The translations under genes and the position numbers were made by a program. A DNA stretch of 64,000 nucleotides, taken from the IMG/VR virus record IMGVR_UViG_3300018080_000098, positions 285,794 through 349,793 of that record; one strand, given 5' to 3'. The notes beneath the pieces are model-generated. The model searched no databases and was not told where the DNA came from. It worked only from the letters and a program-made list of their open reading frames with translations. This document shows, one piece after another, positions 20,298-42,400 of this stretch; within the stretch, counting starts at the first letter, position 1, and each line of letters opens with the position of its first letter.

Positions 20298-20377
20298 CCT
20301 CCTTGGATTGCCTTACCAGGCGTGGCCAAGCCAAGCCATACCGTGCTCCACGGTACCAAGCACCACGCAGCCACGCC
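20298..20377 (-). repeat. 5-nt periodic (N)GY-NN tract T1, candidate guide RNA directly 3' of the RAMP-like gene
   Basis: Minus strand: GGCgt GGCtg CGTgg TGCtt GGTac CGTgg AGCac GGTat GGCtt GGCtt GGCca CGCct GGTaa GGCaa TCCaa GGAgg; first 14 units all NGY. Confidence 0.9.
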
Positions 20378-20386
20378 CGGTAAAAT

Positions 20387-20974
20387 CTACGCCACCGCTT
20401 CAGCGTCGTCCTCGACCACCTCCCATCCAGTCACCTGGAACTTCCCGAAGGTTCCCTTCTTCGTAGGCCGGTAGTCGCCCAGCCCCACACGCTTCCCCGC
20501 AGCCTCCACGATGTCGTGAATGAGGTTTACATCGAACACATCCTCGTCCACCTCGAGCGTGAACTTCAGCTTCCACTTGTCCAGGCGTGCCCGGTGGCGC
20601 AGCACCGCACCCTTCGTGGAGGGATTCACCACCCGGCGGCTGTCCACCTCGAACTTCTTCGTGCCAAACGAGCACGTGAGCTCCTCTACCGTCACGCCTC
20701 CCGTGAGCAGCGTCCCACTCGTTGTGGTTACCTTGTTCTTTCCCAGCTTGAAGAACTTCCCGGCCTCGATGAGACACGCCAGGATGTTGGTCCCCGGGAA
20801 GTGGAGCATTCCCTTGTTGTCCATGTAGGCGCTCCGTTCCGCTTCCTCCCGTGGCGCGAGCTTCTTCTTGCGCGTCGGGCGGTGCCCCGCCGAGAGCTCC
20901 ATCTCCGCCGCGTCGGTGAACCGGTTCATGAGTAGGGGGGTTTTTCCTTCGATTTGCACTTTCACAATGGCCAT
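20387..20974 (-). CDS. Solitary Cas7/RAMP-like RNA-binding protein (Vipr-like)
   Basis: RAMP-like motifs: VQIEGKTPLLM, FPGTNILACL, and C-terminal G-rich loop GLGDYRPTKKGTFGKF; no other cas gene in window; pentamer tract immediately downstream. Confidence 0.75.
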   Translation of the reverse strand: MAIVKVQIEGKTPLLMNRFTDAAEMELSAGHRPTRKKKLAPREEAERSAYMDNKGMLHFPGTNILACLIEAGKFFKLGKNKVTTTSGTLLTGGVTVEELTCSFGTKKFEVDSRRVVNPSTKGAVLRHRARLDKWKLKFTLEVDEDVFDVNLIHDIVEAAGKRVGLGDYRPTKKGTFGKFQVTGWEVVEDDAEAVA

Positions 20975-21076
20975 GGCGTCTGTTCCTTTCTGTTCTGTGA
21001 TCTATTCCTCGCCTAACAATACCCCGTCCCAATGGCCACTAATCAAAGGGGACGGGCTTCGCGCAACATTGCGCGC

Positions 21077-21286
21077 CTAATCAATGCTTCTACTTCGCTG
21101 CCACGCGAAACAGCCCTCCGCGCCCACGCACCCCAGCCACAACACCCACACCCACCAGGGCAGCACAAACAATGCCAGGTAATCGTTGAACGCTACCGCT
21201 AACGCTACCAGGAAGAGCACCGGTCCCATTCCTAGCACGGCGACAGTAACGGTAAACACCCTAAATATTTTTATCAAGAAGGTCAC
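21077..21286 (-). CDS. Small membrane protein
   Basis: 69 aa, almost entirely hydrophobic. Confidence 0.55.
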   Translation of the reverse strand: MTFLIKIFRVFTVTVAVLGMGPVLFLVALAVAFNDYLALFVLPWWVWVLWLGCVGAEGCFAWQRSRSID

Positions 21287-22067
21287 CTGATGCCCAGAAA
21301 CCTGCGTCCTTCAAGATAGCTTCACACTCCTGCCGATAGCCCTTCTTGAGCTCGATTACGTTCACACCCGGGTGGCGCATCAACCACAAACCGAACACGG
21401 AATTGGTAGCCACAATAAACTGCACTTTCCCAGAGCACCCCTCACGCTGCACCCACTGCCACAACGGGAGTTTGGTAGGCCAGTCCAGAACAGCGTCAGG
21501 CTCGTCGAGAAGAACTGTTGGAGGCCCCTTTTCAATAACAGGCTCGAGCAGCTCTTGCGCCATCTTGATTCTGTGCGCCCATACGTCGTTCACGTTGTTC
21601 GGGGTAATTCTCCAATTGATGCTTTCTTCCTGCGAGCGCTGTACTAGACGCATAAAGCGTCCTGCAACCTGCTGCCCTGCAGATCCCTTGTCGGTTGCAT
21701 TTATGACACCCTCCATCCCAAAATCCCAATCGAATCCACCTCCCACTAGCCCCACTTGTACAGAAGGGTCAAAGTACATCACAGACTTTCCATCAGACTT
21801 GATGGACATGTTCTTCCTGGGGGTATTTCGGAAACCGAACCCAAAGAGCTCATCAATTGACTGCTGGGTAACTGTAGAAGTTCCTCCCTGTTCGCAGTGC
21901 GTGATCCGCGCCAGCGCTTTTATTACCGTGGACTTCCCCGACCCATTCGGGCCCCAGAGCACGTTGACACACGGCTCAAAGTTGAACGTACGCCGTTTAG
22001 GGAACGGTTTCGACCACCACGTAATGGGTGGCTTGTCTCGATTTATTACCTTCAGCTGCTCGATCAT
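21261..22067 (-). CDS. ABC/SMC-like ATPase (AAA_21-like)
   Basis: Walker A GPNGSGKS, degenerate signature SAGQQ, Walker B LLDEPD. Confidence 0.8.
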   Translation of the reverse strand: MIEQLKVINRDKPPITWWSKPFPKRRTFNFEPCVNVLWGPNGSGKSTVIKALARITHCEQGGTSTVTQQSIDELFGFGFRNTPRKNMSIKSDGKSVMYFDPSVQVGLVGGGFDWDFGMEGVINATDKGSAGQQVAGRFMRLVQRSQEESINWRITPNNVNDVWAHRIKMAQELLEPVIEKGPPTVLLDEPDAVLDWPTKLPLWQWVQREGCSGKVQFIVATNSVFGLWLMRHPGVNVIELKKGYRQECEAILKDAGFWASGDLLDKNI

Positions 22068-22876
22068 CAGTCCACCGCACAGTAGTATCCAGGCATCGGA
22101 CGCTGCAGGTTGCCCTTTTTAAGCTGACGCTGCAGGTACTTCGAGATGGCGTTGTTGGTGGGAATCGCTTTGCGGGGAACGCTCTTGTTTGCCTCCAAAA
22201 GCGCTCGCAAGTCCGTCACCGCGAGCATCTCGTACTCCGCTAGCAGCTTGTCCGCTGGGTCCATCCAAGCTGTCCGAGGCTTACCACCACGGACATTTTT
22301 CTTCCGCTTGGACGCGTTCTTACCGTTGCCCTTCTTCGCCCTAGCAACAGCTTTCTTCTCTACCTTTTTGTTCATGAACGGAGACTTGGCTCCATCCCGC
22401 CATCGGTAAGCGCCCTTCGCTACTTTGACAAGCTTCTTCTCCTTGGCAAGCTTGTCGATGTAGTACCACACCAACCCGTAAGTGATGTCATTGTACATGG
22501 GCGACAGCTCCATGGTCAGATAGGTGACAATGTCCACTACCGAGTGCGCTTTTTTGGTACTGAAGAACTTGCGCGCAATGGCTTTCTTCGCGTCCTTAAA
22601 AGAATGCTCAGGAGGAGATTGAGGACGTTTGACCGCTGCCTTCATCTTTTCTACCCGTTGCTTCCCCTCCTCGAGCTCCTCCATGTCTTTCAGCTTTTCC
22701 AGTGCTTGTGTTACTGCAGTGTACACGCCACCTGTTTTTACAAGCTCGCGCTGAGCCTGCTCAAGTATGCGCTTCTGCTCCACCATCAGTTTCTGGAGCT
22801 CCTCACTCTGCTTGATGAGGAGAGCCCTCGTGTGGACGATCGCTTCCGGTTCTGCTGCCTTCTTTTTTCGAGACAT
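22067..22876 (-). CDS. Coiled-coil protein with two winged-helix-like DNA-binding segments
   Basis: N-terminal coiled coil; LAKEKKLVKVAKGAYRW and LKKGNLQRPMPGYY resemble wHTH wings. Confidence 0.6.
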   Translation of the reverse strand: MSRKKKAAEPEAIVHTRALLIKQSEELQKLMVEQKRILEQAQRELVKTGGVYTAVTQALEKLKDMEELEEGKQRVEKMKAAVKRPQSPPEHSFKDAKKAIARKFFSTKKAHSVVDIVTYLTMELSPMYNDITYGLVWYYIDKLAKEKKLVKVAKGAYRWRDGAKSPFMNKKVEKKAVARAKKGNGKNASKRKKNVRGGKPRTAWMDPADKLLAEYEMLAVTDLRALLEANKSVPRKAIPTNNAISKYLQRQLKKGNLQRPMPGYYCAVD

Positions 22877-22905
22877 TAATAATCACCTCCGAGAATTGTT
22901 TCTCA

Positions 22906-22934
22906 GTGATACCAACCCCCACTTACGTTGTCAA
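22906..22934 (-). promoter_or_regulatory. sigma70-type promoter
   Basis: TTGACA-N17-TATCAC on minus strand upstream of 22876. Confidence 0.55.
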
Positions 22935-22953
22935 GAAAATAATAGGAGGGAAT

Positions 22954-23008
22954 AAGCCTTGCGTTGCACCGCCCAGGCTGACAGTGCTACGGTGCACCAT
23001 AGCGCACG
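22954..23008 (-). repeat. (N)GY-NN pentamer tract T2
   Basis: CGTgc GCTat GGTgc ACCgt AGCac TGTca GCCtg GGCgg TGCaa CGCaa GGCtt. Confidence 0.7.
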
Positions 23009-23011
23009 TGG

Positions 23012-24169
23012 CTACCGTTTCGCTACACGTTCCGTCTTTTCCCATACACGCCACCGAAGATGAACGCCGTCCACCATCTCCATCCGAGCCCAGTGTACCC
23101 GCTTTTTCGGACCTTCCTTCCAACCGGTGACCCACTCCTTCTCCGCTTTCTTGATCCACGTCGGCAGCGTCGGAGACATCGGACCCGTTTCTCCCTTCAG
23201 CCACACCAGGCACTGGTCTGCCGGGATGTGCTTCTGCACAGCCGTCGTCCAGAAGGAATACTCGGTGCAGCGAGTCAAGAAACGAAGCTGCTCGATGAAA
23301 CCGGTGAGACGGCTCTTCAACGACCGCGCAGCCTTGAAGTCCTCCTGCGTAGCCTCGTAAGGCGTGTACTCTCCCTCGAGCTCCACACCGTCCACTTTCG
23401 CCTCGAAGGCCCACACCTTGATAGCCTCGTCCTCACCTACCTTCTCACTCTTCGGCCACTCCGGCGGCTTAATGTCGAGCTCCTCCCGCAACCGCTTCAC
23501 CTCCGCGCGCAAAAATCGAAGCTCGTCCTCCAACCGCGAAATAGCAGCCTTCGCCACCAGATAGTACACCCCGTAGAAAGAAGGCCACCGCATCGGGTGT
23601 ACCAGGTACTGGAACCGCAACTCGTTCGCCGCACCGCTCAGCTTCTCGAACACGTCGTTCGGCAAGCCCGTCGGCATGATGTCCACCGATTCCCAACCCT
23701 TGTACCACTTCCCCGTCACGTCCTGCAGCAGCATCGCCCGGTAAGCTCCCACCTCAGCATCCGTCGTCCCGTCTTCCTTGGTTTTCGCTTGGATAACATT
23801 CATATCCTCAATACGAATACCGAATGAGAATGCTGCTTTGTTGGAGGTGAGCCCACTCAAACGACCGTGCCGGTTCTCCTTCGACGTGACCCACTCACCC
23901 TCACGTTTCGTGGACGCGCGGCGCGATTGGTACTTTGGCAGATTCACTACCACCCGGTTCTCTACCAGCGGCGTGAGAAAAGCTGCCAGGTCCAGGTCGG
24001 TTACCGGAACACCATCCGGGTCTACCCAGGCTACTCCGGGCTTCCGCTTGTCGAGGTTGTACCCCCACGCATCCAGTAGCCGTTTGCAGAGGACGCGCAT
24101 GTCCTCCTGTCTGTTCTTGACGATGTCCAGGTCCCGAGCGTCGATTGTTTTTCTTTCTGACGTTACCAT
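23012..24169 (-). CDS. Hypothetical phage protein
   Basis: Start moved to ATG 24169 (MVTSERK; AGGAG RBS); the ORF-track extension runs through pentamer tracts. Confidence 0.75.
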   Translation of the reverse strand: MVTSERKTIDARDLDIVKNRQEDMRVLCKRLLDAWGYNLDKRKPGVAWVDPDGVPVTDLDLAAFLTPLVENRVVVNLPKYQSRRASTKREGEWVTSKENRHGRLSGLTSNKAAFSFGIRIEDMNVIQAKTKEDGTTDAEVGAYRAMLLQDVTGKWYKGWESVDIMPTGLPNDVFEKLSGAANELRFQYLVHPMRWPSFYGVYYLVAKAAISRLEDELRFLRAEVKRLREELDIKPPEWPKSEKVGEDEAIKVWAFEAKVDGVELEGEYTPYEATQEDFKAARSLKSRLTGFIEQLRFLTRCTEYSFWTTAVQKHIPADQCLVWLKGETGPMSPTLPTWIKKAEKEWVTGWKEGPKKRVHWARMEMVDGVHLRWRVWEKTERVAKR

Positions 24170-24189
24170 GTTCTCTGTCTCCTGTTGAC

Positions 24190-24249
24190 TATCCTTGCAA
24201 TGCCTTAGTGGGCATAGGCTCGCTTTGCCACTCCCAGCCTGAGCACACT
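24190..24249 (-). repeat. (N)GY-NN pentamer tract T3
   Basis: AGTgt GCTca GGCtg GGAgt GGCaa AGCga GCCta TGCcc ACTaa GGCat TGCaa GGAta. Confidence 0.7.
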
Positions 24250-24272
24250 TCGTATTACTATCTTTACAAGAT

Positions 24273-24377
24273 GAACCTTGGACTACGATACGCTGCCACG
24301 CATTAGACGCCATCGCAATATATTGCGCTACGATGCCTTGCACTACTTGGCGTCACCACACTCTGCAACACTCAACC
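24273..24377 (-). repeat. (N)GY-NN pentamer tract T4 (21 units, possibly two fused tracts)
   Basis: GGTtg AGTgt TGCag AGTgt GGTga CGCca AGTag TGCaa GGCat CGTag CGCaa TATat TGCga TGGcg TCTaa TGCgt GGCag CGTat CGTag TCCaa GGTtc. Confidence 0.8.
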
Positions 24378-24383
24378 AAGAAA

Positions 24384-24770
24384 CTACTCTTCTTCAATGC
24401 GCTCCGGCAAAGCGTACGTGTGCTGCGCCCAGATGTAAGGCTTCAGCAAACTGGCTACTCGTATGTACTCAGGATTTTCCTGCGCCCACTTTTTAGCTCG
24501 TTTGGTTGCCTGCTCGAAAATGCTTTGCGCTTGCCTGTATGTAAAAGTGAGTAGGACTTCGTCGTCACCATCGTGATCGATTGCTTTTTGTGCTTCCTCC
24601 AGAACAATTAAGCAATCCAGGCAGATAGGTGAAACCAGATACGCACCACTGAACTTGGTGGTACTTTCGTTGAAACGTCTGTCACATTGGGAACAAGTCA
24701 GACCGTTCACTGAAGGGAACCGTTGCTCTCGTGGGACCTCTTCCTTCCGTTCGTAGCTCCATTTGTACAT
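24384..24770 (-). CDS. Hypothetical protein with Zn-finger-like CxxC pairs
   Basis: CSQC...CLDC; RBS supplied by tract T5. Confidence 0.65.
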   Translation of the reverse strand: MYKWSYERKEEVPREQRFPSVNGLTCSQCDRRFNESTTKFSGAYLVSPICLDCLIVLEEAQKAIDHDGDDEVLLTFTYRQAQSIFEQATKRAKKWAQENPEYIRVASLLKPYIWAQHTYALPERIEEE

Positions 24771-24775
24771 AACAA

Positions 24776-24855
24776 ACTCCTTGCAGCGCTTTACTCCACT
24801 TCACACTAGCTAGCCACACACCGCCGAGCTCCACAGTACTTCGCCGGGCGACGCC
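24776..24855 (-). repeat. (N)GY-NN pentamer tract T5
   Basis: GGCgt CGCcc GGCga AGTac TGTgg AGCtc GGCgg TGTgt GGCta GCTag TGTga AGTgg AGTaa AGCgc TGCaa GGAgt. Confidence 0.85.
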
Positions 24856-24858
24856 AGG

Positions 24859-25146
24859 TCAGTCTTTCGACAACTCCAACGGAACACACGTGTCCACACA
24901 CTGCTCAAAGCACTTCTTGTGCTTCTGCAGCACCTTTTCTTTGTAGCGATCTTTCAGTACGGATTCGGTAGGGAGGTCGAAATAGTAAAGCGCACTGATC
25001 ACGACAGCCGAGCACAGGATTTCGAGGAAAATAACACGCCAGCCTATCCCGCCCTTCTCGCTGAACCAGTTGTTCAGCAGAGCTGAAAGCACGATTACGC
25101 CCATGCAGATACTGACACCCATCACGATGATTTCGTTGTGCGTCAA
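24859..25146 (-). CDS. Small two-TM membrane protein
   Basis: TTG start after GGAG; two hydrophobic helices. Confidence 0.6.
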   Translation of the reverse strand: MTHNEIIVMGVSICMGVIVLSALLNNWFSEKGGIGWRVIFLEILCSAVVISALYYFDLPTESVLKDRYKEKVLQKHKKCFEQCVDTCVPLELSKD

Positions 25147-25152: not shown

Positions 25153-25221
25153 CTCCTTGCCTCACCGGTCCACGCTCCACCGAAGCTTGCCCCACGCAGC
25201 CCCGCCACTCCGGGCGATGCC
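25153..25221 (-). repeat. (N)GY-NN pentamer tract T6
   Basis: GGCat CGCcc GGAgt GGCgg GGCtg CGTgg GGCaa GCTtc GGTgg AGCgt GGAcc GGTga GGCaa GGAg. Confidence 0.8.
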
Positions 25222-25232
25222 TGGTGCGTTTA

Positions 25233-25302
25233 TTTCCTTGCCAAACCATACGTGACCATACCATTCCGCGGGTTGCGGTTCCGAGACGAGCGGCGCCACT
25301 CC
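25233..25302 (-). repeat. (N)GY-NN pentamer tract T7
   Basis: GGAgt GGCgc CGCtc GTCtc GGAac CGCaa CCCgc GGAat GGTat GGTca CGTat GGTtt GGCaa GGAaa. Confidence 0.75.
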
Positions 25303-28357: not shown

Positions 28358-29152
28358 CTAAAACTCAAAGGTGGCCCCTTTCCCTACGAAGCCCCAAAAG
28401 CCTGCTTCTACAGCTTTTTCTTGCCACTCTTCCCATTCTTTAATGATGTTGTCATGATAATGAACGAGCCTCATTTTTCCCTTCGTATCCGAATTGAGCT
28501 CACAGAGCTCCTCAAAGTGGGCGTGTACCCCCGATTTAAAGGGAAGTGTTTCTACATCATGAAAAATGATTGCTGCTTCGTTGTAGAAGTCGCGGATCTG
28601 GTTGGGCGCATGCTGGGTATCTGTCGTCAGAAAAACTTTTTCATCTGTGGAAGCTCTGAACATGAGTCCGAAAGATGGCTCAAATGTGAACGCATTCACA
28701 AAATGGATCATTTGTATGAGGCGGAAGTTTGGGCAGCTGGCTTCGGAGGGGATCACGAAAGATTGGTTGCGCTCGATAACATGGACATCGAAGTACGTAT
28801 CGAGCGTGGCGCGTTTCACTTGGAGGGAAGCGAGTCCAGCACTCAGACCGCGTTCCCATAGGGCGTCCACCATGAACTCAGAGATGAACATGTCGGGACG
28901 CCCTTTGTACCGGGGGTCGAAGTAGGAGGAAAACGCCAAGTATTCCAGGCCACCGATGTGGTCCGCATGCAGATGCGAAATGTACACTCCGTTGATGTCT
29001 AGGTAACTAAGTCCTTGAGCTGCGAGGGAGAAACGTATGTCACCACCGCAGTCGATGAGGAGCTTGTAGCCACGGTCGAATTCGATGAGTGCGTTCGTCT
29101 GGAAGTTTTCCAGAGTAAAAGCGTTGCCGGTTCCGAGCCAGGTAATTTTCAT
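28358..29152 (-). CDS. MBL-fold metallo-hydrolase, Apyc1-like cyclic-nucleotide phosphodiesterase
   Basis: GTGNAF, LLIDCG, HLHADHIGGLE (HxHxDH), TTDT, FHD...GVHA, HYHDN; start moved to ATG 29152. Confidence 0.8.
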   Translation of the reverse strand: MKITWLGTGNAFTLENFQTNALIEFDRGYKLLIDCGGDIRFSLAAQGLSYLDINGVYISHLHADHIGGLEYLAFSSYFDPRYKGRPDMFISEFMVDALWERGLSAGLASLQVKRATLDTYFDVHVIERNQSFVIPSEASCPNFRLIQMIHFVNAFTFEPSFGLMFRASTDEKVFLTTDTQHAPNQIRDFYNEAAIIFHDVETLPFKSGVHAHFEELCELNSDTKGKMRLVHYHDNIIKEWEEWQEKAVEAGFWGFVGKGATFEF

Positions 29153-32049: not shown

Positions 32050-32114
32050 TTGCCTTGCATTACCAAACAGTGCCTAGCCCAACTCGACGTGAGCACGCCG
32101 TACTGAGCGCGGCA
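32050..32114 (-). repeat. (N)GY-NN pentamer tract T8
   Basis: TGCcg CGCtc AGTac GGCgt GCTca CGTcg AGTtg GGCta GGCac TGTtt GGTaa TGCaa GGCaa. Confidence 0.85.
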
Positions 32115-32159: not shown

Positions 32160-32783
32160 TCAGCCATCCAGCTGCGGAATCAGGAAGCTCACGAAGCACA
32201 CGCCGACGAGAACAGTACCGAATTTGTCGTCCACGACGAGGTCTTTGATGTGGTACTGCTGGTTGGCCATGAAATAGTGCTTGTTGCCTACGATGTGGCT
32301 AGACTGACTAGCCGGTCCGTAGCGACGCTCGAACAGACCGTTCATCGACTGGGTGAGCATCTTCCGAGCCTTCTCCGTAGAGCCACACCCTTCGTACTCA
32401 CAGGCGAAGCCGCCCACAAGTTCGTCAGAACGCTCTTCAGCAGGAAATGTCTTGTACACATCAAACGTGGCCACCCCCGCACAGAGGTGCTGCCCTTCTT
32501 CGCCGTTCATCTGGGCCATAATGCACTCGAGCACCATCCCGTGGTGCATGAGGCCCTGCTCCTGTGCGTCCTGGAGGGTGATCTGCTCCGCTTCCTTCGG
32601 AATCACACTCGTGTATTTTACGATGTTGCAGTTCTCGATGCCACCCTCGAGCAACGCGATGTCGTAGTCGGTCGTCTCCCACGGATCCGACCCGGGGCCG
32701 AAGTTGCTCTGCCCGGCGCCCGCGACGACGATGTATTTCTCGGGAATGCAGCTGGCTGTTCGGATCAGCTTGTGCTCACTCAT
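32160..32783 (-). CDS. pdaD: Pyruvoyl-dependent arginine decarboxylase
   Basis: ALLEGGIENCNIVKYTSVIP with Thr-Ser self-cleavage site as in chlamydial AaxB; G..LECIMA and GFACEY motifs. Confidence 0.8.
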   Translation of the reverse strand: MSEHKLIRTASCIPEKYIVVAGAGQSNFGPGSDPWETTDYDIALLEGGIENCNIVKYTSVIPKEAEQITLQDAQEQGLMHHGMVLECIMAQMNGEEGQHLCAGVATFDVYKTFPAEERSDELVGGFACEYEGCGSTEKARKMLTQSMNGLFERRYGPASQSSHIVGNKHYFMANQQYHIKDLVVDDKFGTVLVGVCFVSFLIPQLDG

Positions 32784-33366
32784 TCTCGTCTCCTATAATT
32801 CTCGGATTCCCGACAGCGTAGCCATGCTTGTCGTACTCCGTGGGCCAACGTTGCAGCGCGAGTATCTGAACTCGCTTCTCATTGGTAATTTTGAGAGCGT
32901 GCTGCTCATCTCTGGCTAGCACACCATTCAATACCATGAACTCTGTGCTGTTTAAGCGCTCCTCTACTTCCTTGCTTTCACCGTTGGCCCAAAAGCGTTT
33001 GTGCGAGGACTTCCAACCTTTGGAGTCGGGGACGGGCGGACCGTAAAAGGAAACTTTATTTCTGGCTTTGAGAGCGTCTGCGAGTGATTTGCGACGGACC
33101 GCGGAAGTCTCACCATCCTTCGACATAAAGACATAGAAGCCGTACTTATCTTTTGGCACCTCCGGGAAGGCTGCGTCAACTTCCCAAGTTTCGACACGGT
33201 AATCCGGAGTGTACCGGTAGCTACCATCCTCGTTACAAACGTTTTCACCGTCTTCCTTTTCGGTGTTGTGGAGTTTGCAGAACTCGTGTGCTTTTTCTTT
33301 GGTGGAGAACATGGCGGCGATTCCGTAGTCAGAATACTCACCACATGTTACTACATATACTTCCAT
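32776..33366 (-). CDS. Hypothetical phage protein
   Basis: MEVYVVTCGEYSDYGIAAMFSTKEKA; follows tract T9. Confidence 0.7.
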   Translation of the reverse strand: MEVYVVTCGEYSDYGIAAMFSTKEKAHEFCKLHNTEKEDGENVCNEDGSYRYTPDYRVETWEVDAAFPEVPKDKYGFYVFMSKDGETSAVRRKSLADALKARNKVSFYGPPVPDSKGWKSSHKRFWANGESKEVEERLNSTEFMVLNGVLARDEQHALKITNEKRVQILALQRWPTEYDKHGYAVGNPRIIGDENE

Positions 33367-33369: not shown

Positions 33370-33439
33370 TTACCTAACCTTGCATCACGTGGGCGTGCTG
33401 TGCGCAACCGCGCATGAGCTTGCAGCACTCGGCCGCTCC
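33370..33439 (-). repeat. (N)GY-NN pentamer tract T9
   Basis: GGAgc GGCcg AGTgc TGCaa GCTca TGCgc GGTtg CGCac AGCac GCCca CGTga TGCaa GGTta GGTaa. Confidence 0.8.
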
Positions 33440-33448: not shown

Positions 33449-33726
33449 TTATGGGCGTTTGTTGATTTTACGTACTTCGTCGATCGCTTCCAGCACAAAC
33501 TGCAAGCGCTTCTCGTCTTTAGCTACCAAGCGATTGCGCTCAGCAATCGCTACTTGACGATCACACACGGAGTTTGGGTAGTGCTTGATCCACCCTTCGT
33601 GTGTAGTCAGACGTCGAAGTGTGTTCTTGTTGTCACATTTGTACACTCGGTACTCTGTGACAAAAACACCAGCGTCTACTCCCTCAAAACTAAGATGCGC
33701 CCTGTATTTGAAAAAATGTTGTACAT
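33449..33726 (-). pseudogene. Hypothetical gene with apparent frameshift at a T6 run
   Basis: RBS-backed ATG 33726 frame stops after 16 codons; adding one T joins it to the open frame ending at 33449. Confidence 0.45.
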
Positions 33727-33731
33727 CGTAA

Positions 33732-33796
33732 TCTCCTTGCGTTGCCTTACTGCACAGCTCCCTACCTTTCCAGACCAGGCGTTGCTCCGCTCTGCA
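33732..33796 (-). repeat. (N)GY-NN pentamer tract T10
   Basis: TGCag AGCgg AGCaa CGCct GGTct GGAaa GGTag GGAgc TGTgc AGTaa GGCaa CGCaa GGAga. Confidence 0.8.
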
Positions 33797-33809
33797 GTAG
33801 AATACCTCG

Positions 33810-34001
33810 TTAAAGCTCGTCGGCTCTCATGCTCTTCTTCCAAACGACCGCTCCGTTCTCGTCGAGAATGCGGAGCTCCGCTTGGACAGCTTTGTCAACT
33901 CGAGGAATTTCGTCGTCGCTGGAAGCCCACGAAAAATGGGATGCCAGGGCCTCCGCTACTTGCCGTAGCCTGCTTACCAAGTGCCTACGTTCTTCTGACA
34001 T
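33810..34001 (-). CDS. Hypothetical protein
   Basis: Start moved to ATG 34001 (MSEERR) behind tract T11. Confidence 0.6.
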   Translation of the reverse strand: MSEERRHLVSRLRQVAEALASHFSWASSDDEIPRVDKAVQAELRILDENGAVVWKKSMRADEL

Positions 34002-34002: not shown

Positions 34003-34057
34003 TCGCCTTTCCTTGCACCGCCCGGCCCGACTGTGCTACGCCAAGCCACCTATAGCC
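34003..34057 (-). repeat. (N)GY-NN pentamer tract T11
   Basis: GGCta TAGgt GGCtt GGCgt AGCac AGTcg GGCcg GGCgg TGCaa GGAaa GGCga. Confidence 0.75.
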
Positions 34058-34085: not shown

Positions 34086-34631
34086 TTAATGGGTCTGTGG
34101 TGAAACCCGTTTTGGTACCCACTTTAACTTGGTAGAAGGCACCCTCCAGACAATATCCGCGCGAACACCATCTACCCGGTAGGATAGTCTACCATTGGGA
34201 TCATCGAGTAGATCTTGGACCCGAAGGACGCAGGCGTTCGCTTTCGCGTGCCATAGTTGGCGGTACGCAGGCGCATACTTGCTGATAGGTCTCCCTGTGA
34301 TGTAGGAACAGTTGTACGGAACGACCCCGTCGCCAGGAAAGCCGCCACGTATGGCAACGTTCCAATCGTTGTCTGTTCCCATTGGATGACAGTCGCTCAT
34401 CGCAAGCTCGTACTTCCTGCAGTAACACTTTTCACAAACGTTGTCTTGCTTCTCCTCGAAGTGCTTAACCCTTTCCGAAAGCTTGCGAATCAGCTTGCGC
34501 TGCGTAGCCTTCTGCATCTGCAGACGTGCTACCTGCTGCTTGAGCGCACACGCTTGGCCGCAGGGCTGCATTTCTGTAGCACCGCCAGTGCAGCTACTTA
34601 GCAAAAACAACCATACAATGATGTACCTCAT
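34086..34631 (-). CDS. Probable secreted lipoprotein
   Basis: Start moved to ATG 34631; MRYIIVWLFLLSS/C lipobox-like N-terminus. Confidence 0.65.
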   Translation of the reverse strand: MRYIIVWLFLLSSCTGGATEMQPCGQACALKQQVARLQMQKATQRKLIRKLSERVKHFEEKQDNVCEKCYCRKYELAMSDCHPMGTDNDWNVAIRGGFPGDGVVPYNCSYITGRPISKYAPAYRQLWHAKANACVLRVQDLLDDPNGRLSYRVDGVRADIVWRVPSTKLKWVPKRVSPQTH

Positions 34632-34640: not shown

Positions 34641-34670
34641 ACTCCTTGCATTGCCGGGCCTTGACATGCC
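34641..34670 (-). repeat. Degenerate (N)GY-NN tract T12
   Basis: GGCat GTCaa GGCcc GGCaa TGCaa GGAgt; phase is disrupted further upstream. Confidence 0.5.
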
Positions 34671-34740
34671 CACGCAAACCCACCCAGTGCTTCTATGGCA
34701 GACCAGTACTCGAGCTCAGTCGTCGGATGTTTTTTCAGCA

Positions 34741-35623: not shown

Positions 35624-35678
35624 GTACCGCGCATTACATCTCCTGGCCGTACCCGGCATAAGATGACGCTGCCTTGCT
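35624..35678 (-). repeat. (N)GY-NN pentamer tract T13
   Basis: AGCaa GGCag CGTca TCTta TGCcg GGTac GGCca GGAga TGTaa TGCgc GGTac; lacks the usual GCAAGG end. Confidence 0.6.
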
Positions 35679-35919
35679 ACCACTCCCTGTTCGGGAAAGC
35701 CTTCTGCAAAACTTCGCGGAACACTTCCCGTACGAGGATCAATTTTCTGATGTCGTCCCGGTCCAGCTTATTGTTGGCCAGCGCAACGTCGATAGCAGTA
35801 CAGTTCGCGTGGATGTGCGCCACGGCGAACCTCGCGGTTAGAGTCTCGAGGTCCTCCTGGCTCATTTCCTCGAGCTCTGCTGCCGACAGTTTCTCGAAGT
35901 CTTTAATCACTCCATTCAT
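35677..35919 (-). CDS. Hypothetical protein
   Basis: Start moved to ATG 35919 (AAGGAG RBS). Confidence 0.6.
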   Translation of the reverse strand: MNGVIKDFEKLSAAELEEMSQEDLETLTARFAVAHIHANCTAIDVALANNKLDRDDIRKLILVREVFREVLQKAFPNREW

Positions 35920-36109
35920 CGTGATACACTCCTTCTCCCCCACATTTCACAGTCTTGGGATCCCCTCTAACGAAAATACCGCTCTGTGTGGGCTCCCCAC
36001 AGAAGCAGCACGGGAACGGCTTGAGTCGGACGGTGTAGCGCACAGGCTGCCTATCGCTACGTATCCGCCACCAACAATTCTCGCAGATAATGTGCGTCCA
36101 TCTGGACAT
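35903..36109 (-). CDS. Small Zn-finger-like protein
   Basis: CENC...CCFC; RBS from tract T14. Confidence 0.65.
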   Translation of the reverse strand: MSRWTHIICENCWWRIRSDRQPVRYTVRLKPFPCCFCGEPTQSGIFVRGDPKTVKCGGEGVYHDEWSD

Positions 36110-36288: not shown

Positions 36289-36930
36289 TTACTTGTGCTC
36301 CTGATGCCACACAATGAGCACCTTGGTTGCGTCATCTATGTCGATCCCCAGGTTCAATATCCTGTCCGCTATCTCGAGGTACCGTTTACGTATAGCACAC
36401 GGACGCTCCCAGCTGCTGGTGTGCCAGCTACAGCACTCGTCGTCGCACAGCCTAGTGTGTAGCTGTTCCGCGCACTGCTGCAGGTACGCAGTCGTAGGCC
36501 GTAGCTCGTTCCTTCTTGTTATGAAATATTTGTCAGCTGCTTCTACGATAGGCCCACCATCTGGTTCGAACTCCACTCCCCTACGCACAGCGTTTATCAC
36601 GTCAGTGAGAATGTTACGTAGATCGGGGTCCTTTACCTTATGCAGCCGTTTAGCAGCTTTGCGTAGAAGGTCCCACGCTGAGTCTGGCCGCTCCATCTCA
36701 ACCGCTGTGTGATTATCCGCTTCGGTGTGGAGCCCACACTCCATCCCACAGTGACACACGCACTCTTCGTGCTCCTCCAGATGCACGAGGGGAATAGCTA
36801 CGTACTTCCGACCGGGGCTCGAGGCGTACACTGTAGGCAGCCAGTCCTCCTTCGGTGGACTCAGCGCGTTCAGTAAAATCGCGAGAGTGTTCCTGTAAAT
36901 CCAGACTTCTTTGAGAGGCTTGTCTGCCAT
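36289..36930 (-). CDS. Hypothetical protein with Cys/His clusters
   Basis: Start moved to ATG 36930 (MADKPL) behind tract T15. Confidence 0.65.
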   Translation of the reverse strand: MADKPLKEVWIYRNTLAILLNALSPPKEDWLPTVYASSPGRKYVAIPLVHLEEHEECVCHCGMECGLHTEADNHTAVEMERPDSAWDLLRKAAKRLHKVKDPDLRNILTDVINAVRRGVEFEPDGGPIVEAADKYFITRRNELRPTTAYLQQCAEQLHTRLCDDECCSWHTSSWERPCAIRKRYLEIADRILNLGIDIDDATKVLIVWHQEHK

Positions 36931-36934: not shown

Positions 36935-36999
36935 TCTCCTTGCATTACCGTTCCAGACACCGCCATGGCGCACATTGCGCCTCCAAGGCCAGCCGCACG
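36935..36999 (-). repeat. (N)GY-NN pentamer tract T15
   Basis: CGTgc GGCtg GCCtt GGAgg CGCaa TGTgc GCCat GGCgg TGTct GGAac GGTaa TGCaa GGAga. Confidence 0.75.
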
Positions 37000-37284
37000 T
37001 CAACTATCCTCGTCATCGTTTATTTCTACTACGTCGTCGGGATTCGTCACGTAATCCTCTAACGACGACAACACGATCGCCATCGTTTGTGTCAAAGTGG
37101 TACGTGTAGCGAGGTTAGCTCCCTTGTCCTGAAACTGCTTGAGCATCTTATTCATCCAATGGAGCTCTTTGAGCAGCAGTCCCTCGGTCTCGTCCGTGAT
37201 GTCACCCGACCGTTTCGTTTTAACATTGTGAGGCAACAGTGATGACATTACTACTTTCTTTTTATAGGTCCTCGGGTGACTCAC
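37000..37284 (-). CDS. Hypothetical protein
   Basis: Start moved to GTG 37284 behind tract T16. Confidence 0.55.
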   Translation of the reverse strand: MSHPRTYKKKVVMSSLLPHNVKTKRSGDITDETEGLLLKELHWMNKMLKQFQDKGANLATRTTLTQTMAIVLSSLEDYVTNPDDVVEINDDEDS

Positions 37285-37288: not shown

Positions 37289-37348
37289 TTTCCTTGCGTT
37301 GCCCTACCGGGCCTTACTTCGCCCCGCTGGGCTTTGCCTGGCAGTGGA
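37289..37348 (-). repeat. (N)GY-NN pentamer tract T16 (overlaps 3' end of upstream CDS)
   Basis: TCCac TGCca GGCaa AGCcc AGCgg GGCga AGTaa GGCcc GGTag GGCaa CGCaa GGAaa. Confidence 0.8.
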
Positions 37349-37718
37349 CTGTATCCCAAGTTCGTTTTCTAAGTTGCTGCAAAGCGTTTTTATAGTCTTC
37401 CGGCGAATCGAGAGTCCAATCGTGGGTGGAAAGCTCGAAGAGCTCTAGGTCCCGGTTGAACGCTACGTCTAGAATTCGAACGGGCTCGCAAAAAGCGCGT
37501 TTACTGTGCAGAAGGATGTCTTTTGTGGGAACGAAGGGAAGGGTGAAGTATCTGTCCATCACTGTCTCCTCTTCGTAGGGCAAGCTCATCCACTTGTTGC
37601 GCTTAATGATTTCCACAGACATAAGGAAAGAGGAAGCGTCGGGAGGGGCTTTCCACTCGTCGGGCATGGGGTGCTTCCAGCCAACTTTTATACGGAGGCG
37701 ACAGTTGTACTCGGGCAT
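37314..37718 (-). CDS. Hypothetical protein
   Basis: ATG behind tract T17. Confidence 0.65.
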   Translation of the reverse strand: MPEYNCRLRIKVGWKHPMPDEWKAPPDASSFLMSVEIIKRNKWMSLPYEEETVMDRYFTLPFVPTKDILLHSKRAFCEPVRILDVAFNRDLELFELSTHDWTLDSPEDYKNALQQLRKRTWDTVHCQAKPSGAK

Positions 37719-37726
37719 CGTTCGTT

Positions 37727-37786
37727 ATTCCTTGCGTCACGTTGCCGCGCCCTACCCCGGTTTGCCAGTGCTAGCCGGGCGCGACC
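37727..37786 (-). repeat. (N)GY-NN pentamer tract T17
   Basis: GGTcg CGCcc GGCta GCAct GGCaa ACCgg GGTag GGCgc GGCaa CGTga CGCaa GGAat. Confidence 0.8.
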
Positions 37787-38144: not shown

Positions 38145-38339
38145 TTACTTCTCCTCCAGTTTTGCCCAACGGCAATCCGGGCAAAGGTCTTCTCCGCCAG
38201 GGCGACCAACGCTCCACCCGAGTTTCCGAAGGTCATTACGCAATTGATGCACAGGTCTGCGTGTCGGTCCCCGGCTCCAACCGAATCGGGAGTGCACCTG
38301 GTTGCACCCGTCACAAATAATTCGTAGTTCAATGCTCAT
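38145..38339 (-). CDS. Small Zn-finger-like phage protein
   Basis: Start moved to ATG 38339; CDGC...GW...DLCPDC. Confidence 0.65.
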   Translation of the reverse strand: MSIELRIICDGCNQVHSRFGWSRGPTRRPVHQLRNDLRKLGWSVGRPGGEDLCPDCRWAKLEEK

Positions 38340-38343
38340 TAAA

Positions 38344-38388
38344 GCTCCTCGCGTTGCCGCACCCAGCGTTGCATAACCGTTCAACGCC
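38344..38388 (-). repeat. (N)GY-NN pentamer tract T18
   Basis: GGCgt TGAac GGTta TGCaa CGCtg GGTgc GGCaa CGCga GGAgc. Confidence 0.7.
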
Positions 38389-38391
38389 TAG

Positions 38392-38640
38392 CTAAGCATG
38401 TCGCCAATCAGGCTGCAACTCCTCGAACGCTTTACACTCCCAGGGACCATCCCGCCTCGGCACGTCCTTTAGGTATTTTACAGGGCCCTCTCGCCGCTCT
38501 CGAAACAATCGAGCTCGAGGTTCACCTTCTTCCCGACCGAACCACGCTTGCTGCTCTTGCAGATGACAATACTCGAAGGTCTTGTCACCGCGAGGACCAC
38601 CCCAGTGAACACAGCGTCGACACAAGCTATTCGCCATCAT
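38392..38640 (-). CDS. Small Cys-containing protein
   Basis: AAGGAGG RBS; CRRCVHW...C...C. Confidence 0.6.
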   Translation of the reverse strand: MMANSLCRRCVHWGGPRGDKTFEYCHLQEQQAWFGREEGEPRARLFRERREGPVKYLKDVPRRDGPWECKAFEELQPDWRHA

Positions 38641-40680: not shown

Positions 40681-40694
40681 CGTCTTCTCCTTTA

Positions 40695-40904
40695 CTACTC
40701 GCTCCTCAACAAAGCTACCACTCCCCGCTTCCGTACCTCCCGACGCCGAAAATAAAACTCCCAGGACCCCGCCACCCTACGAAAGAAAGTCACCCACCGC
40801 CGCGCCACTACCAAATCCCCCACCCGCGTCTTCAACCACACCCCCTCCAGCTTCAGCCCACGACAAGAGTCGCAAACGTACAAACGAGCACTAGAGCAGC
40901 TCAT
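40695..40904 (-). CDS. Hypothetical protein
   Basis: Start moved to ATG 40904; region has strong strand compositional bias. Confidence 0.4.
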   Translation of the reverse strand: MSCSSARLYVCDSCRGLKLEGVWLKTRVGDLVVARRWVTFFRRVAGSWEFYFRRREVRKRGVVALLRSE

Positions 40905-40968
40905 ACTAAACAAGTTCCCCTGCTCCCAGGCTACCCGAGGCTCCTGCGACAACTCTCTCCACCTGTGT

Positions 40969-41181
40969 CTACACCGTTTCACTGTCGCCCTCCTTCGCAC
41001 ACCCCTCGCTCCGCCGATGACGCGCCCCACACCGAAAACACAACCGCACACCATCGAAGCGCCGCTTCACTTCTCCCGTAGCCCACGACGCACACCCCAA
41101 CACCCGAGCTCGAGCATTACAGGGACTGCCGTCGTTGTAGTACAAAGGTTTATCTACTGTGTCCCAGTAGGAACTACTCAT
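40969..41181 (-). CDS. Hypothetical protein
   Basis: Start moved to ATG 41181 (MSSSYW; GGAG RBS). Confidence 0.45.
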   Translation of the reverse strand: MSSSYWDTVDKPLYYNDGSPCNARARVLGCASWATGEVKRRFDGVRLCFRCGARHRRSEGCAKEGDSETV

Positions 41182-41365
41182 CGCTTCTCCTTCCACACTC
41201 ACAAGAAGGACCGTCCTCAGACCACCCCACGTGCGCCTCTCCTAGCAGGCGCCGCATGCACGTGGCTGTGCTGTCGCGCACCTCCACCAAGCCCCACGCT
41301 TCCGTGAACGCTCTCTCGCTAAAGAAACCCTGGTCAGCGAAAGCTAGTACCTCGTCGCGCGTCAT
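41174..41365 (-). CDS. Hypothetical protein
   Basis: ATGA-coupled to upstream gene. Confidence 0.5.
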   Translation of the reverse strand: MTRDEVLAFADQGFFSERAFTEAWGLVEVRDSTATCMRRLLGEAHVGWSEDGPSCECGRRSDE

Positions 41366-42117
41366 TTGTCACCCTCATCATCCCACAGAGTCAACTTCAC
41401 AGGAATTCTTTTATCCATCAAGTACTCCAAACGGCCACTCACCTCCATAGCTACCATGTCATCGGCAGGCAAACGGACAGACAAATCCACGCCAGCACTC
41501 TCGCCACCCCACGAAGGAAACTCCAGCCGCACAACCAACCCTTCCAATCCCTTCACACTCTCCGCGAAGTACACCAGAGGATACTTGCGTACACCCTTCC
41601 CGGGCAAAGGAGGCTCCGGTGGACCCGGCAACCCCAGAGACCCCTCGGCGCGCGAAAACTCCCCCTCTCCCTCTCCCTCCCCCACAACACTAGCACCCCC
41701 AATACACAGTCCATCAGCATCCTCGAAAGCAGGAAGACCCAGACACTCACGAATAGCAGCAACAGGGATACCCACGAGCTCCCCTCTAGAGTTGATACCC
41801 TGCTCACTGAACCCCTTACGCTGGTACTCCAGGATAGTGTAAGCACACAGGGCTACGACCTTCTTTATCTTCTCGAGAGCTTCGTTCCTCTCACACACGA
41901 GAGACTCTACCATGGCATCCTGCTTACGGGTAGTGTCGTCACCCCTCCTCCATTTACCCTCGTGCTCCTCCAACCACTCCTCGAACTCCCTACAGCTGGC
42001 TACACCGTGGCGTACCCTACGTTGGCACTCCTCCACAGATACAAGAGCATACTCAGAGTTGTGGTAGCACTCGTCACACGGGATAGGGGAACCCTTCTTC
42101 TCAATCTCACCGCTCAT
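41362..42117 (-). CDS. Hypothetical protein
   Basis: 251 aa; TAAATG coupling. Confidence 0.6.
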   Translation of the reverse strand: MSGEIEKKGSPIPCDECYHNSEYALVSVEECQRRVRHGVASCREFEEWLEEHEGKWRRGDDTTRKQDAMVESLVCERNEALEKIKKVVALCAYTILEYQRKGFSEQGINSRGELVGIPVAAIRECLGLPAFEDADGLCIGGASVVGEGEGEGEFSRAEGSLGLPGPPEPPLPGKGVRKYPLVYFAESVKGLEGLVVRLEFPSWGGESAGVDLSVRLPADDMVAMEVSGRLEYLMDKRIPVKLTLWDDEGDK

Positions 42118-42309
42118 TTATTCGTCTCCCAGCACTTCAGGTGCCACCGCAGCCTCACAACCACCACTTCTTCGCTCATGGTAACGCATAGCCTGCATGC
42201 GAGGCAATACTACACGACACCAACAGGAGGAACACACGTACTGAATAGTAGTAGCTCCACCAGAGTGAACAGAGACAGGTATTCCACAGTACGGACAGAT
42301 GCCTAGCAT
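42118..42309 (-). CDS. Small Zn-ribbon-like protein
   Basis: CPYC...CSSC; RBS from tract T19. Confidence 0.6.
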   Translation of the reverse strand: MLGICPYCGIPVSVHSGGATTIQYVCSSCWCRVVLPRMQAMRYHERRSGGCEAAVAPEVLGDE

Positions 42310-42315
42310 TTAAAC

Positions 42316-42400
42316 ACTCCTCGCTTTACCTTGCAGTGCAGTACACCGTCATGCCTCACCACACCCAGCGCCACGTCACCTTACGCCACCTCGCTTCGCA
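42316..42400 (-). repeat. (N)GY-NN pentamer tract T19
   Basis: TGCga AGCga GGTgg CGTaa GGTga CGTgg CGCtg GGTgt GGTga GGCat GACgg TGTac TGCac TGCaa GGTaa AGCga GGAgt. Confidence 0.85.

What the first reader, a model, noticed from the sequence alone, without database searches (positions are those of the whole stretch)
20298..42400. Nineteen pentamer tracts dispersed over 22 kb, most ending in the next gene's ribosome-binding site
Seen: tracts T1-T19 (6-21 units) all lie on the coding (-) strand, mostly fill intercistronic gaps from stop to start, each has a different NN string, and nearly all end in a conserved YC/GC-AA-GG(A) block. In about 13 of 19 that end sits at Shine-Dalgarno distance from the next start codon. 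Position 1 of the trinucleotide is relaxed (NGY rather than strict GGY). None were noticed in the structural arm or the early-cassette arm. Inference: the guide repertoire is embedded in mRNAs rather than in one array. Either guides are excised from polycistronic transcripts, or the RAMP filament loaded in cis occludes the SD and acts as a translational regulon over about 13 genes, coupling guide loading to gene expression. I know of no description of this dispersed, SD-fused layout.
Basis: partly seen in the sequence, partly recalled or inferred. Interest (0 to 1): 0.85.

Follow-up and report, generated by a model that had tools for sequence, protein, structure and literature searches.

The report
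Scattered VIPR guide RNAs between genes
A giant phage scatters the pentamer-repeat guide RNAs of its VIPR system, a recently described CRISPR-like RNA-guided silencer, through 19 gaps between its genes instead of one array, and most end in a motif that also serves as the next gene's ribosome-binding site.

Summary
Nineteen tracts of NGYNN pentamers (5-16 units) lie on the coding (-) strand between 20308 and 42400. There are 8 strict runs of at least 6 units, against 0.12 expected. The ORF at 20387-20974 is a Vipr protein, the RAMP of the VIPR system described in 2026 preprints.

Three things are new:
- **Layout.** In 71 other Vipr loci, and in four 20-kb contexts, the tracts sit in compact arrays beside vipr. 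Here they are spread through intercistronic gaps and 5' leaders over 22 kb. A 75%-identical relative (L119) has tracts at the same gaps.
- **Selection.** In four orthologous tracts the NN positions change 3-4 times less often than G1 and Y3 (p=0.0003). That fits guides still in use.
- **Junction.** Most tracts end in an AA|GGA(G) junction that serves as the Shine-Dalgarno site of the next gene in about 12-13 of 19 cases. The same junction ends tracts in ORF-less arrays of relatives, so it is a family tail motif put to a second use, not a special invention.

No DNA targets were found. Translational control by Vipr is plausible but untested.

Verdict: a new variant of a known system, of moderate to high interest.

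The parts
20387..20974 (-). vipr gene: 195-aa Vipr (minimal RAMP/Cas7-like) protein with G-loop GLGDYRP
   Evidence: Profile of 58 homologs hits PDB 36pp SUSP1 Vipr at E=4.8e-30; the protein alone gives E=2e-4. AF2 model pLDDT 89.7. Foldseek top hits are Csm3/Cas7 at E=3e-7. Homologs lie next to pentamer arrays in 71 of 105 fetched stretches.
20308..20377 (-). T01: 14 units, all GY, directly after the vipr stop; tail TCCAAGGAGG, then the ATG of gene 19798-20292
   Evidence: Folds as a long hairpin, z=-3.8. Ortholog in L119.
22959..23013 (-). T02: 11 units (8 GY) at the end of a transcription unit, followed by a TTGACA promoter
   Evidence: Same position in L119 and L122 with a different NN string.
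24195..24259 (-). T03: weak tract, 13 units (8 GY); tail GGATAG, with a separate SD further downstream
24323..24377 (-). T04: 11 units, all GY, not SD-fused
   Evidence: Ortholog in L119 with conserved NN.
24781..24855 (-). T05: 15 units (14 GY); tail GGAGTTTGTT, then the ATG of gene 24384-24770
25157..25262 (-). T07 (25238-25262, 5 units) and T06 (25157-25221, 13 units) in tandem; the T06 tail GGAGTCTGTT precedes the TTG of gene 24859-25146
32050..32114 (-). T08: 13 units in the 5' leader after promoter TTGACGCAGTAAA, upstream of the radical-SAM gene; the gene has a separate SD
33370..33434 (-). T09: 11-13 units running to 3 nt before the ATG of gene 32776-33366
33737..33806 (-). T10: 14 units (11 GY); tail GGAGATTACG, then an ATG that opens a 16-codon mini-ORF
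34013..34057 (-). T11: 9 units; tail GGAAAGGCGAG, then the ATG of gene 33810-34001
34646..34680 (-). T12: 7 units (5 GY); tail GGAGTTCGTATAGT, then the ATG of gene 34086-34631
35624..35678 (-). T13: 11 units (9 GY), no GGA tail, followed by promoter TTGACATCGTAAA
36121..36150 (-). T14: short tract, 6 units (4 GY); tail GGAAATATAGC, then the ATG of ORF 35903-36109
   Evidence: Register corrected by eye.
36940..36999 (-). T15: 12 units (8 GY); tail GGAGATTTT, then the ATG of gene 36289-36930
37294..37343 (-). T16: 10 units, all GY; overlaps the last 30 nt of the upstream ORF; tail GGAAATATT, then the GTG of gene 37000-37284
37732..37786 (-). T17: 11 units (9 GY); tail GGAATAACGAACG, then the ATG of gene 37314-37718
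38349..38398 (-). T18: 10 units (9 GY); tail GGAGCTTTA, then the ATG of gene 38145-38339
42321..42400 (-). T19: 16 units (15 GY) in the 5' leader, about 200 nt after the promoter at ~42630; tail GGAGTGTTTAA, then the ATG of gene 42118-42309
20995..21030 (-). Three-unit mini-tract plus tail (GGTAT TGTTA GGCGA GGAATAGATCACAG) upstream of the vipr start, conserved in relatives; coordinates are approximate
21261..22876 (-). Two genes in conserved synteny upstream of vipr, candidate accessory (vap) genes: an SMC/ABC-type P-loop ATPase (21261-22067) and a 269-aa protein with a weak AbiEi-like HTH (22067-22876)
   Evidence: Same order in L119, L122 and L123.

Best explanation
The 19 tracts are VIPR guide RNAs (vrRNAs) for the Vipr protein encoded at 20387-20974.

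**Published mechanism, established for phage SUSP1.** One Vipr protomer binds each pentamer. It holds G2 and Y3 (and G1 where present) and presents the two variable bases. The loaded filament binds double-stranded DNA that matches the NN string with one skipped base per unit, and it silences transcription of competing genetic elements.

**What differs here.** This jumbo-phage lineage has no compact array beside vipr. The guides sit in the gaps between genes, and in 5' leaders, of the middle-gene transcription units that run the same way as vipr. They must therefore be transcribed as parts of mRNAs (shown by position only). Vipr then probably assembles on them, and the filament either protects the tract while host RNases trim the flanks or stays on the mRNA (inferred).

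**The ending.** Each tract ends in the clade's usual junction, AA|GGA(G). In this phage the start codon of the next gene lies 9-15 nt after the last unit in about 12-13 cases, so the junction also acts as that gene's Shine-Dalgarno site. A filament ending there would overlap the 30S footprint. Guide loading and translation of the downstream gene are therefore likely to compete (inferred, not shown).
For: - **Vipr identity.**. The G-loop D and R and the thumb R that contact G1, G2 and Y3 in SUSP1 (10.64898/2026.04.26.720927) are conserved.
- **Tract reality and strand bias.**
- **Family link.** The same pentamer tracts lie next to Vipr homologs, mostly on the same strand as vipr, in 71 independent viral contigs.
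- **Clade-typical consensus.** The relaxed G1 is shared with the closest Vipr subclade.
- **Family-wide junction.** AA|GGA also ends tracts in ORF-less arrays.
- **Heritable layout.** L119 (Vipr 75% identical) has tracts at orthologous gaps.
- **Selection.** In orthologous tracts the substitutions are G1 12/34, G2 5/35, Y3 13/35 (12 are C<->T), N4 4/35 and N5 3/35. Fisher p=2.6e-4, or p=0.003 without T01.
- **Structure.** Apart from T01, tract RNAs are no more structured than shuffles.
- **Transcription.** Few consensus promoters and no strong terminators lie on the - strand in the block.
- **SD use.** Start codons at SD distance in 11-13 of 19. 83 of 102 tract-less genes use the same GGAG-type SD.
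Against: - **No target found.** There is none in the window or in about 1 Mb of fetched loci. Four 8-unit cores scanned in viral contigs gave chance-level hits. The single genome hit, an Alcanivorax intergenic site with 24/28 NN matches, is what chance predicts for that database size.
- **Weak tracts.** T03, T07, T12 and T14 are short or imperfect.
- **T01.** It is a strong hairpin, which could hinder filament assembly or serve another role.
- **Tail.** No long structured 3' tail like the SUSP1 pseudoknot is evident.
- **Missing data.** There are no expression, processing or binding data.
- **Coverage.** Only 64 kb plus 9 kb of the 350-kb genome was seen, so a conventional array elsewhere cannot be excluded.
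Confidence: 0.72

Rival explanations
1. The tracts are mainly cis-acting operators. Vipr polymerises on the intercistronic tracts to block the adjacent ribosome-binding sites, or to change mRNA stability. This would form a translational regulon over about a dozen middle genes, and DNA targeting would be secondary or lost.
For: - Twelve to 13 tails lie at SD distance, and the tract's last units fall within a 30S footprint.
- In 19 of 71 other loci a tract ends just before vipr's own start, which suggests autoregulation.
- A conserved mini-tract plus tail lies upstream of vipr here and in relatives.
- No DNA targets were found.
Against: - An operator needs only the G2/Y3 scaffold, yet NN is the most conserved part of orthologous tracts.
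- Six of 19 tracts are not next to a start codon (T02, T03, T04, T07, T08, T13).
- The AA|GGA junction occurs in ORF-less arrays.
- NN strings differ among tracts, as expected for distinct guides.
Confidence: 0.2
2. The dispersed tracts are decaying, non-functional remnants of former vrRNAs that drifted into intergenic DNA. Only T01 beside vipr is active.
For: - G1 is relaxed, several tracts are imperfect (T03, T12, T14), and relatives L120-L123 have lost most tracts.
Against: - Relaxed G1 is typical of the whole subclade, including its compact arrays.
- G2 and NN are conserved while G1 and Y3 vary, and 12 of 13 Y3 changes keep a pyrimidine.
- Eight strict runs of 6 or more units persist.
Confidence: 0.05
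3. The period-5 pattern serves another factor. Candidates are a TRAP-like ring protein that binds triplets spaced by 2 nt, or a DNA-level binding array.
For: Period-5 triplet repeats that overlap an SD are how TRAP represses trpG. This rests on general knowledge of TRAP, not on a test here.
Against: - No TrpBP or other RNA-binding domain appeared in the roughly 50 ORFs scanned, about 40 of them in Pfam.
- A cognate Vipr is encoded in the block and co-occurs with such tracts in 71 other contigs.
- The strict bias towards the coding strand argues against a DNA site.
Confidence: 0.03

Closest known systems
VIPR (Viral Interference Programmable Repeat) systems: Vipr protein plus vrRNAs (bioRxiv 10.64898/2026.04.26.720920, .720927, 2026.10.15.759431)
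   Same: A small RAMP protein of about 195 aa with a G-loop and thumb. Tandem pentamers with a conserved G-Y core and variable NN. Tracts on the same strand as vipr, one of them directly beside it. A conserved 3' junction. Phage-encoded.
   Different: Guides are not in a compact, staggered or ribozyme-spaced array. They are spread over at least 22 kb, separated by protein-coding genes. Position 1 is relaxed (NGY). The tail is reduced to a short AAGGA(G) junction that doubles as the SD of the next gene. No target has been identified yet.
Orphan or solo vrRNAs on VIPR-null phages and satellites (10.64898/2026.10.15.759431)
   Same: vrRNAs found away from a vipr gene.
   Different: Here the genome does encode Vipr. 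The dispersed vrRNAs lie inside its own operons, and nothing suggests they are decoys or hijackers.
Class 1 CRISPR Cas7/Csm3 backbone on crRNA
   Same: Homologous fold, with one protomer per repeat unit of the guide.
   Different: Period 5, not 6. No CRISPR repeats, no cas genes and no adaptation module.
TRAP and T4 gp32/RegA-type translational repression by proteins coating an mRNA leader
   Same: A multimeric protein bound to a periodic or unstructured leader that overlaps the SD. This is only an analogy for the inferred side effect.
   Different: Unrelated proteins, and no guide function.

Membership tests
VIPR system | Vipr protein: minimal RAMP with RRM core, glycine-rich loop and thumb | tested here: met
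   HMM hit to PDB 36pp SUSP1 Vipr at E=4.8e-30. AF2 pLDDT 89.7. Foldseek to Csm3/Cas7 at E=3e-7. G-loop GLGDYRP and thumb RHR aligned to SUSP1 D177/W178/R179 and R138.
VIPR system | vrRNA made of 9-16 tandem GGY/NN pentamers, or a related consensus | tested here: met
   Nineteen tracts of 5-16 units. G2 and Y3 are kept; G1 is G in 42% of units. The relaxed form is shared with the closest subclade.
VIPR system | NN differs between guides while the scaffold is conserved | tested here: met
   All tract NN strings differ. In orthologs G2 and NN are conserved while G1 and Y3 vary.
VIPR system | Invariant structured 3' tail after the repeat tract | tested here: inconclusive
   Only a short conserved junction, (G/Y)GCAA|GGA(G), is present. 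No pseudoknot-like tail was seen, and what follows is a start codon.
VIPR system | vrRNAs clustered in the intergenic regions flanking vipr | tested here: not met
   Only T01 and a 3-unit mini-tract flank vipr. Eighteen others lie 2-22 kb away between genes, whereas 71 other loci and four 20-kb contexts are compact. This is the variant feature.
VIPR system | Accessory vap gene next to vipr | tested here: inconclusive
   A syntenic P-loop ATPase and an HTH-like gene lie upstream in the window, L119, L122 and L123. No comparison with the published vap1-6 was possible.
VIPR system | DNA targets matching NN with a 1-nt skip | tested here: inconclusive
   No match above chance was found. Only exact 8-10-unit cores of four tracts could be scanned.
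VIPR system | Discrete small RNAs that co-purify with Vipr | not testable with these tools
   Needs RNA-seq and pull-down.
CRISPR-Cas class 1 | CRISPR repeat-spacer array, 6-nt backbone periodicity, other cas genes | tested here: not met
   The period is 5, no direct-repeat array is present, and no cas families appeared in the Pfam or PADLOC scans.
TRAP-type attenuation/translation control | TrpBP-fold ring protein plus (G/U)AG triplets | tested here: not met
   The motif is NGY, not (G/U)AG. No TrpBP hit appeared among the roughly 40 ORFs scanned in Pfam, about 32 of them in or next to the tract block, the other eight in the arms outside the block. The Pfam scan covered most but not all small ORFs.

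The most novel reading that the evidence does not exclude
In this phage lineage the VIPR machinery may do two jobs with one RNA. Each intercistronic tract would act as a DNA-targeting guide and also as a Vipr-responsive operator on the next gene's ribosome-binding site. Rising Vipr levels would then shut down or re-time about a dozen middle genes, and its own synthesis, while arming the guides. A further possibility is that the AAGGA tail of this whole Vipr clade is a ribosome-binding-site mimic, which would explain the start-like codons 6-9 nt after it in ORF-less arrays.
Probability: 0.25. Interest if true: 0.8.

Novelty: new variant of a known kind. Interest (0 to 1): 0.62.

Why it matters
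VIPR was described only in 2026, and only with guides in arrays beside vipr. This locus shows three things.
- Guides can be carried inside ordinary operons. Searches limited to the neighbourhood of vipr will miss them, and 20-kb windows may undercount a phage's repertoire.
- Orthologous guides in two diverged phages keep their NN letters while the scaffold letters drift. That is a purely genomic signature of guide function, and it could be used to find functional vrRNAs elsewhere.
- The guide's 3' junction is also a working ribosome-binding site. This sets up a direct, testable competition between guide loading and translation, a regulatory layer not considered in the published work.

Tried and rejected
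- **Known phages.** Megablast of the region against 50,697 phage records found nothing.
- **Known RNA families.** Rfam at gathering threshold found only the two tRNAs.
- **Domain scans.** Pfam, PHROGs and PADLOC scans of about 50 ORFs found no other RNA-binding candidate. Most ORFs are orphans.
- **TRAP-like, G-quadruplex and DNA-iteron readings.** I considered these first. I dropped them once the neighbouring conserved protein proved to be Vipr.
- **Relatives of the 558-aa protein.** Only the phage itself was found.
- **Metagenome scan with the conserved T01 core.** It returned only the same phage from a sister sample, 100% identical.
- **Target searches.**
  - Sliding the full NN-x strings over the window and about 1 Mb of loci gave nothing above permuted controls.
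  - Exact 8-unit cores of T01, T05, T04 and T16 in viral contigs gave 12, 9, 18 and 5 hits, all extending at chance level.
  - The 10-unit T01 core in 596 Gb of genomes gave one hit against about 1.1 expected.
- **H17-to-N explanation for relaxed G1.** It did not hold across the family: L101 and L105 have N at that position and strict GGY.
Full report

The window is the last 64 kb of a 349,793-bp viral contig, IMGVR_UViG_3300018080_000098.

On the - strand of 20298-42400 there are 8 strict runs of (NGYNN) with at least 6 units. The longest has 14. In 300 dinucleotide-preserving shuffles the mean is 0.12, and no run exceeds 7 units. The + strand of the whole window has a single 6-unit run, in an unrelated early-region repeat.

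Allowing one missed unit and anchoring on the recurrent 3' block gives 19 tracts of 5-16 units. All are on the coding strand. Most start between 30 nt before and 45 nt after the upstream stop codon. Sixteen end in G(C/T)(A/G)A followed by GG.

In 11 tracts by a strict rule, plus T14 after a register correction, the GGA(G)/AGGT lies 9-15 nt before the start codon of an independently called gene. T10 leads only a 16-codon mini-ORF. These genes have no other Shine-Dalgarno site, and 83 of 102 tract-less genes in the window use the same GGAG-type motif.

No tract occurs in 1-20 kb or 43-64 kb. One more lies about 76 kb upstream of the window's start in the same contig, again between co-directional ORFs (L016).

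**2. What is it?**

I scanned 2.9 million viral contigs with a pattern of six GY units ending in the conserved block (GYNNN x5 + GYAAYGCAAGG). It returned 105 stretches, many holding large pentamer arrays.

Clustering all ORFs of these loci showed one protein family of about 195 aa in 71 of them. In the window it corresponds to ORF 20387-20974, directly upstream of T01. Pfam had nothing for this ORF, and PHROGs gave phrog_4652, of unknown function.

A profile of 58 members matches PDB entry 36pp, "SUSP1 Vipr protein", at E=4.8e-30. The AlphaFold2 model (pLDDT 89.7) matches Csm3/Cas7 backbone subunits of type III and VII CRISPR complexes at E of about 3e-7.

The literature search shows this is the VIPR system:
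- Vipr is a minimal RAMP.
- vrRNAs consist of 9-16 GGY/NN pentamers plus a 3' tail.
- One protomer binds each repeat.
- Double-stranded DNA is recognised through the NN letters, with one skipped base per unit.
- The outcome is transcriptional silencing of rival phages and satellites (10.64898/2026.04.26.720920, 10.64898/2026.04.26.720927, 10.64898/2026.10.15.759431).

**3. What is unusual here?**

*(a) Layout.*
- In the 71 other Vipr loci the tracts form compact arrays. Spacings are 3-100 nt, broken only by vipr itself or a neighbouring gene.
- Four 20-kb contexts of 43-57%-identical Viprs on large contigs have tracts only immediately flanking vipr.
- The published architectures are tandem, staggered, hammerhead-spaced or single.
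- In the window only T01 and a three-unit mini-tract flank vipr. The other 18 tracts are separated by protein-coding genes over 22 kb.
- The block contains few promoters: ~42630, ~35600, ~32140, ~22910 and ~19780. There are no convincing terminators on the - strand.
- So the tracts are intercistronic spacers or 5' leaders (T08, T19) of polycistronic transcripts.

*(b) The layout is inherited.*
- The closest Viprs (74-83% identical) lie on short metagenomic contigs that are syntenic with the window: ATPase, vipr, then a DUF4215 protein.
- L119 (75% identical) carries tracts at the orthologous gaps: after vipr, before and after the 385-aa gene, and a tandem pair before the next gene.
- L120-L123 have lost most tracts, so content turns over.

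*(c) Selection.*

In ungapped alignments of four orthologous tracts (T01, T04, T05, T06 against L119) the substitution counts by position are:

| Position | Changed / aligned |
|---|---|
| G1 | 12/34 |
| G2 | 5/35 |
| Y3 | 13/35 (12 are C<->T) |
| N4 | 4/35 |
| N5 | 3/35 |

- G1+Y3 against N4+N5 gives Fisher p=2.6e-4. Without the hairpin-forming T01 it is p=0.003. All four tracts show the same trend.
- This is what one expects if G2 and the pyrimidine are read by the protein, G1 is free in this clade, and NN carries information that is still in use.
- It argues against decayed relics and against a pure operator role.

*(d) Relaxed G1.* G1 is G in 42% of units here. The closest subclade shows the same: L008 0.29, L035 0.22, L029 0.08, L036 0.56. 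This is a "related consensus" of the kind the discovery paper mentions, not decay.

**4. The SD-like ending**

In relatives whose arrays contain no ORFs, the tract also ends in AA|GGA. Examples are L069 GGCAA|GGATTTTAG, L056 GGCAA|GGATACTTTAG, L101 GGCAA|GGAACTAC and L033 GGCAA|GGAACCTCC.

Among 111 tracts that had not been selected by my scan pattern:
- 36 are followed by GGA.
- 11 are followed by GG.
- 14 have AAGG within 6 nt.
- Only 8 are followed by an ORF.

The junction is therefore a clade-wide feature of the vrRNA. In 19 of 71 loci a tract ends within 45 nt of vipr's own start.

What is particular to the window's lineage is that the tail is cut down to this junction and a real start codon follows at SD distance in about a dozen places. 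That is dual use. By simple geometry, a filament covering the last units would overlap the 30S footprint, and ribosomes terminating on the upstream ORF would run into its 5' end. That Vipr represses these genes, or that translation limits guide loading, is an inference and is not shown.

Except for T01 (a long hairpin, -46.7 kcal/mol, z=-3.8), the tract RNAs are no more structured than shuffles (z from -1.8 to +1.1). That is consistent with a single-stranded filament substrate.

**5. Targets**

| Search | Result |
|---|---|
| Full NN-x strings over the window and about 1 Mb of fetched loci | No match above permuted controls, so no self-target in the window |
| Exact 8-unit cores of T01, T05, T04, T16 in viral contigs | 12, 9, 18 and 5 hits; extensions at chance level |
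| 10-unit T01 core in 596 Gb of genomes | One hit (Alcanivorax sp. DSM 26293, intergenic, 24/28 NN) against about 1.1 expected |

The searches needed exact matches and covered four tracts. The negative result is therefore weak.

**6. Verdict**

These are guides of a RAMP protein embedded in mRNAs. Excision and a translational regulon remain hypotheses.
- The system is known (VIPR). The three preprints held in the library describe neither the dispersed intercistronic layout nor the use of the tail junction as an SD.
- I rate it a new variant of a known kind.
- Limits: only 73 kb of a 350-kb genome was inspected, one diverged relative carries comparable tracts, and there are no experimental data.

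Noticed in passing
window 43000-64000, - strand: The early arm is a repeated cassette. There are 16 copies of the leader GTCGGAHGGAMA just upstream of start codons (0.02 expected), 25 copies of GGTTWAACC (0.4 expected), and 21 matches over 15 sites to the promoter core TTGACNNNGTMAA across the window (0.26 expected).
   Followed up: partly
window 47922-48084, - strand: Adjacent tRNA-His(GTG) and tRNA-Tyr(GTA) genes lie inside the early arm.
   Followed up: no
window 28358-29152, 30905-32026, 32160-32783, - strand: The tract block carries three notable genes: an Apyc1-like metallo-beta-lactamase (anti-Pycsar family, E=2.9e-22), a radical SAM/SPASM enzyme, and a pyruvoyl-dependent arginine decarboxylase. 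They are likely counter-defence or DNA/metabolite-modification genes. A PvlArgDC gene is also present in relative L120.
   Followed up: no
window 20290-20389, - strand: T01 folds into one long imperfect hairpin (-46.7 kcal/mol, z=-3.8), unlike the other tracts. It may double as a stabiliser or terminator for the vipr message. The inner stem is kept in L119.
   Followed up: partly
window ~20995-21030, - strand; L119 ~6020-6050; L122 ~2840-2870: A 2-3-unit mini-tract plus tail, GCAAGGA(N)TGATCACAG, lies upstream of vipr's start and is conserved in three relatives. It could be a nucleation or autoregulatory site.
   Followed up: no
L056 6860-7540, L069 (- strand, array): In ORF-less arrays the tail often carries ATG, GTG or TTG 6-9 nt after GGA, for example GGATACTTTGATG and GGATTTTAGTG. 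The whole tail looks like a ribosome-binding-site mimic or a relic of one.
   Followed up: no
window 33670-33736, - strand: The T10 tail-SD is followed by a 16-codon mini-ORF (MYNIFSNTGRILVLRE) rather than a gene. It may be a leader peptide or a dead start.
   Followed up: no
window 24855, 25221, 37786 (tract 5' ends); L119 ~1400: T05, T06, T17 and the L119 ortholog begin with a shared GGNNT CGCCC GG motif. This suggests paralogy by duplication or a 5' handle.
   Followed up: no
window 23012-24343, - strand: An ATG 9 nt after T04 opens a 433-codon frame that reads through weak tract T03 into the 385-aa gene. The true start of this gene, and so the status of T03, is uncertain.
   Followed up: no
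L124 2927-2955 (Alcanivorax sp. DSM 26293, NZ_FNUM01000003.1): [quoted passage not shown]
   Followed up: partly
window 18875-19609, - strand (ORF 18257-19741): The 494-aa DUF4215 protein downstream of the vipr block contains internal repeats of about 200 bp at 72-76% identity.
   Followed up: no
window 56526-56553, 58359-58383, 60026-60055, + strand: A repeated early-region element, GCTGCGCCGCGCTGCGTCG, gives the only period-5 GY runs on the + strand. It is not a tract.
   Followed up: no
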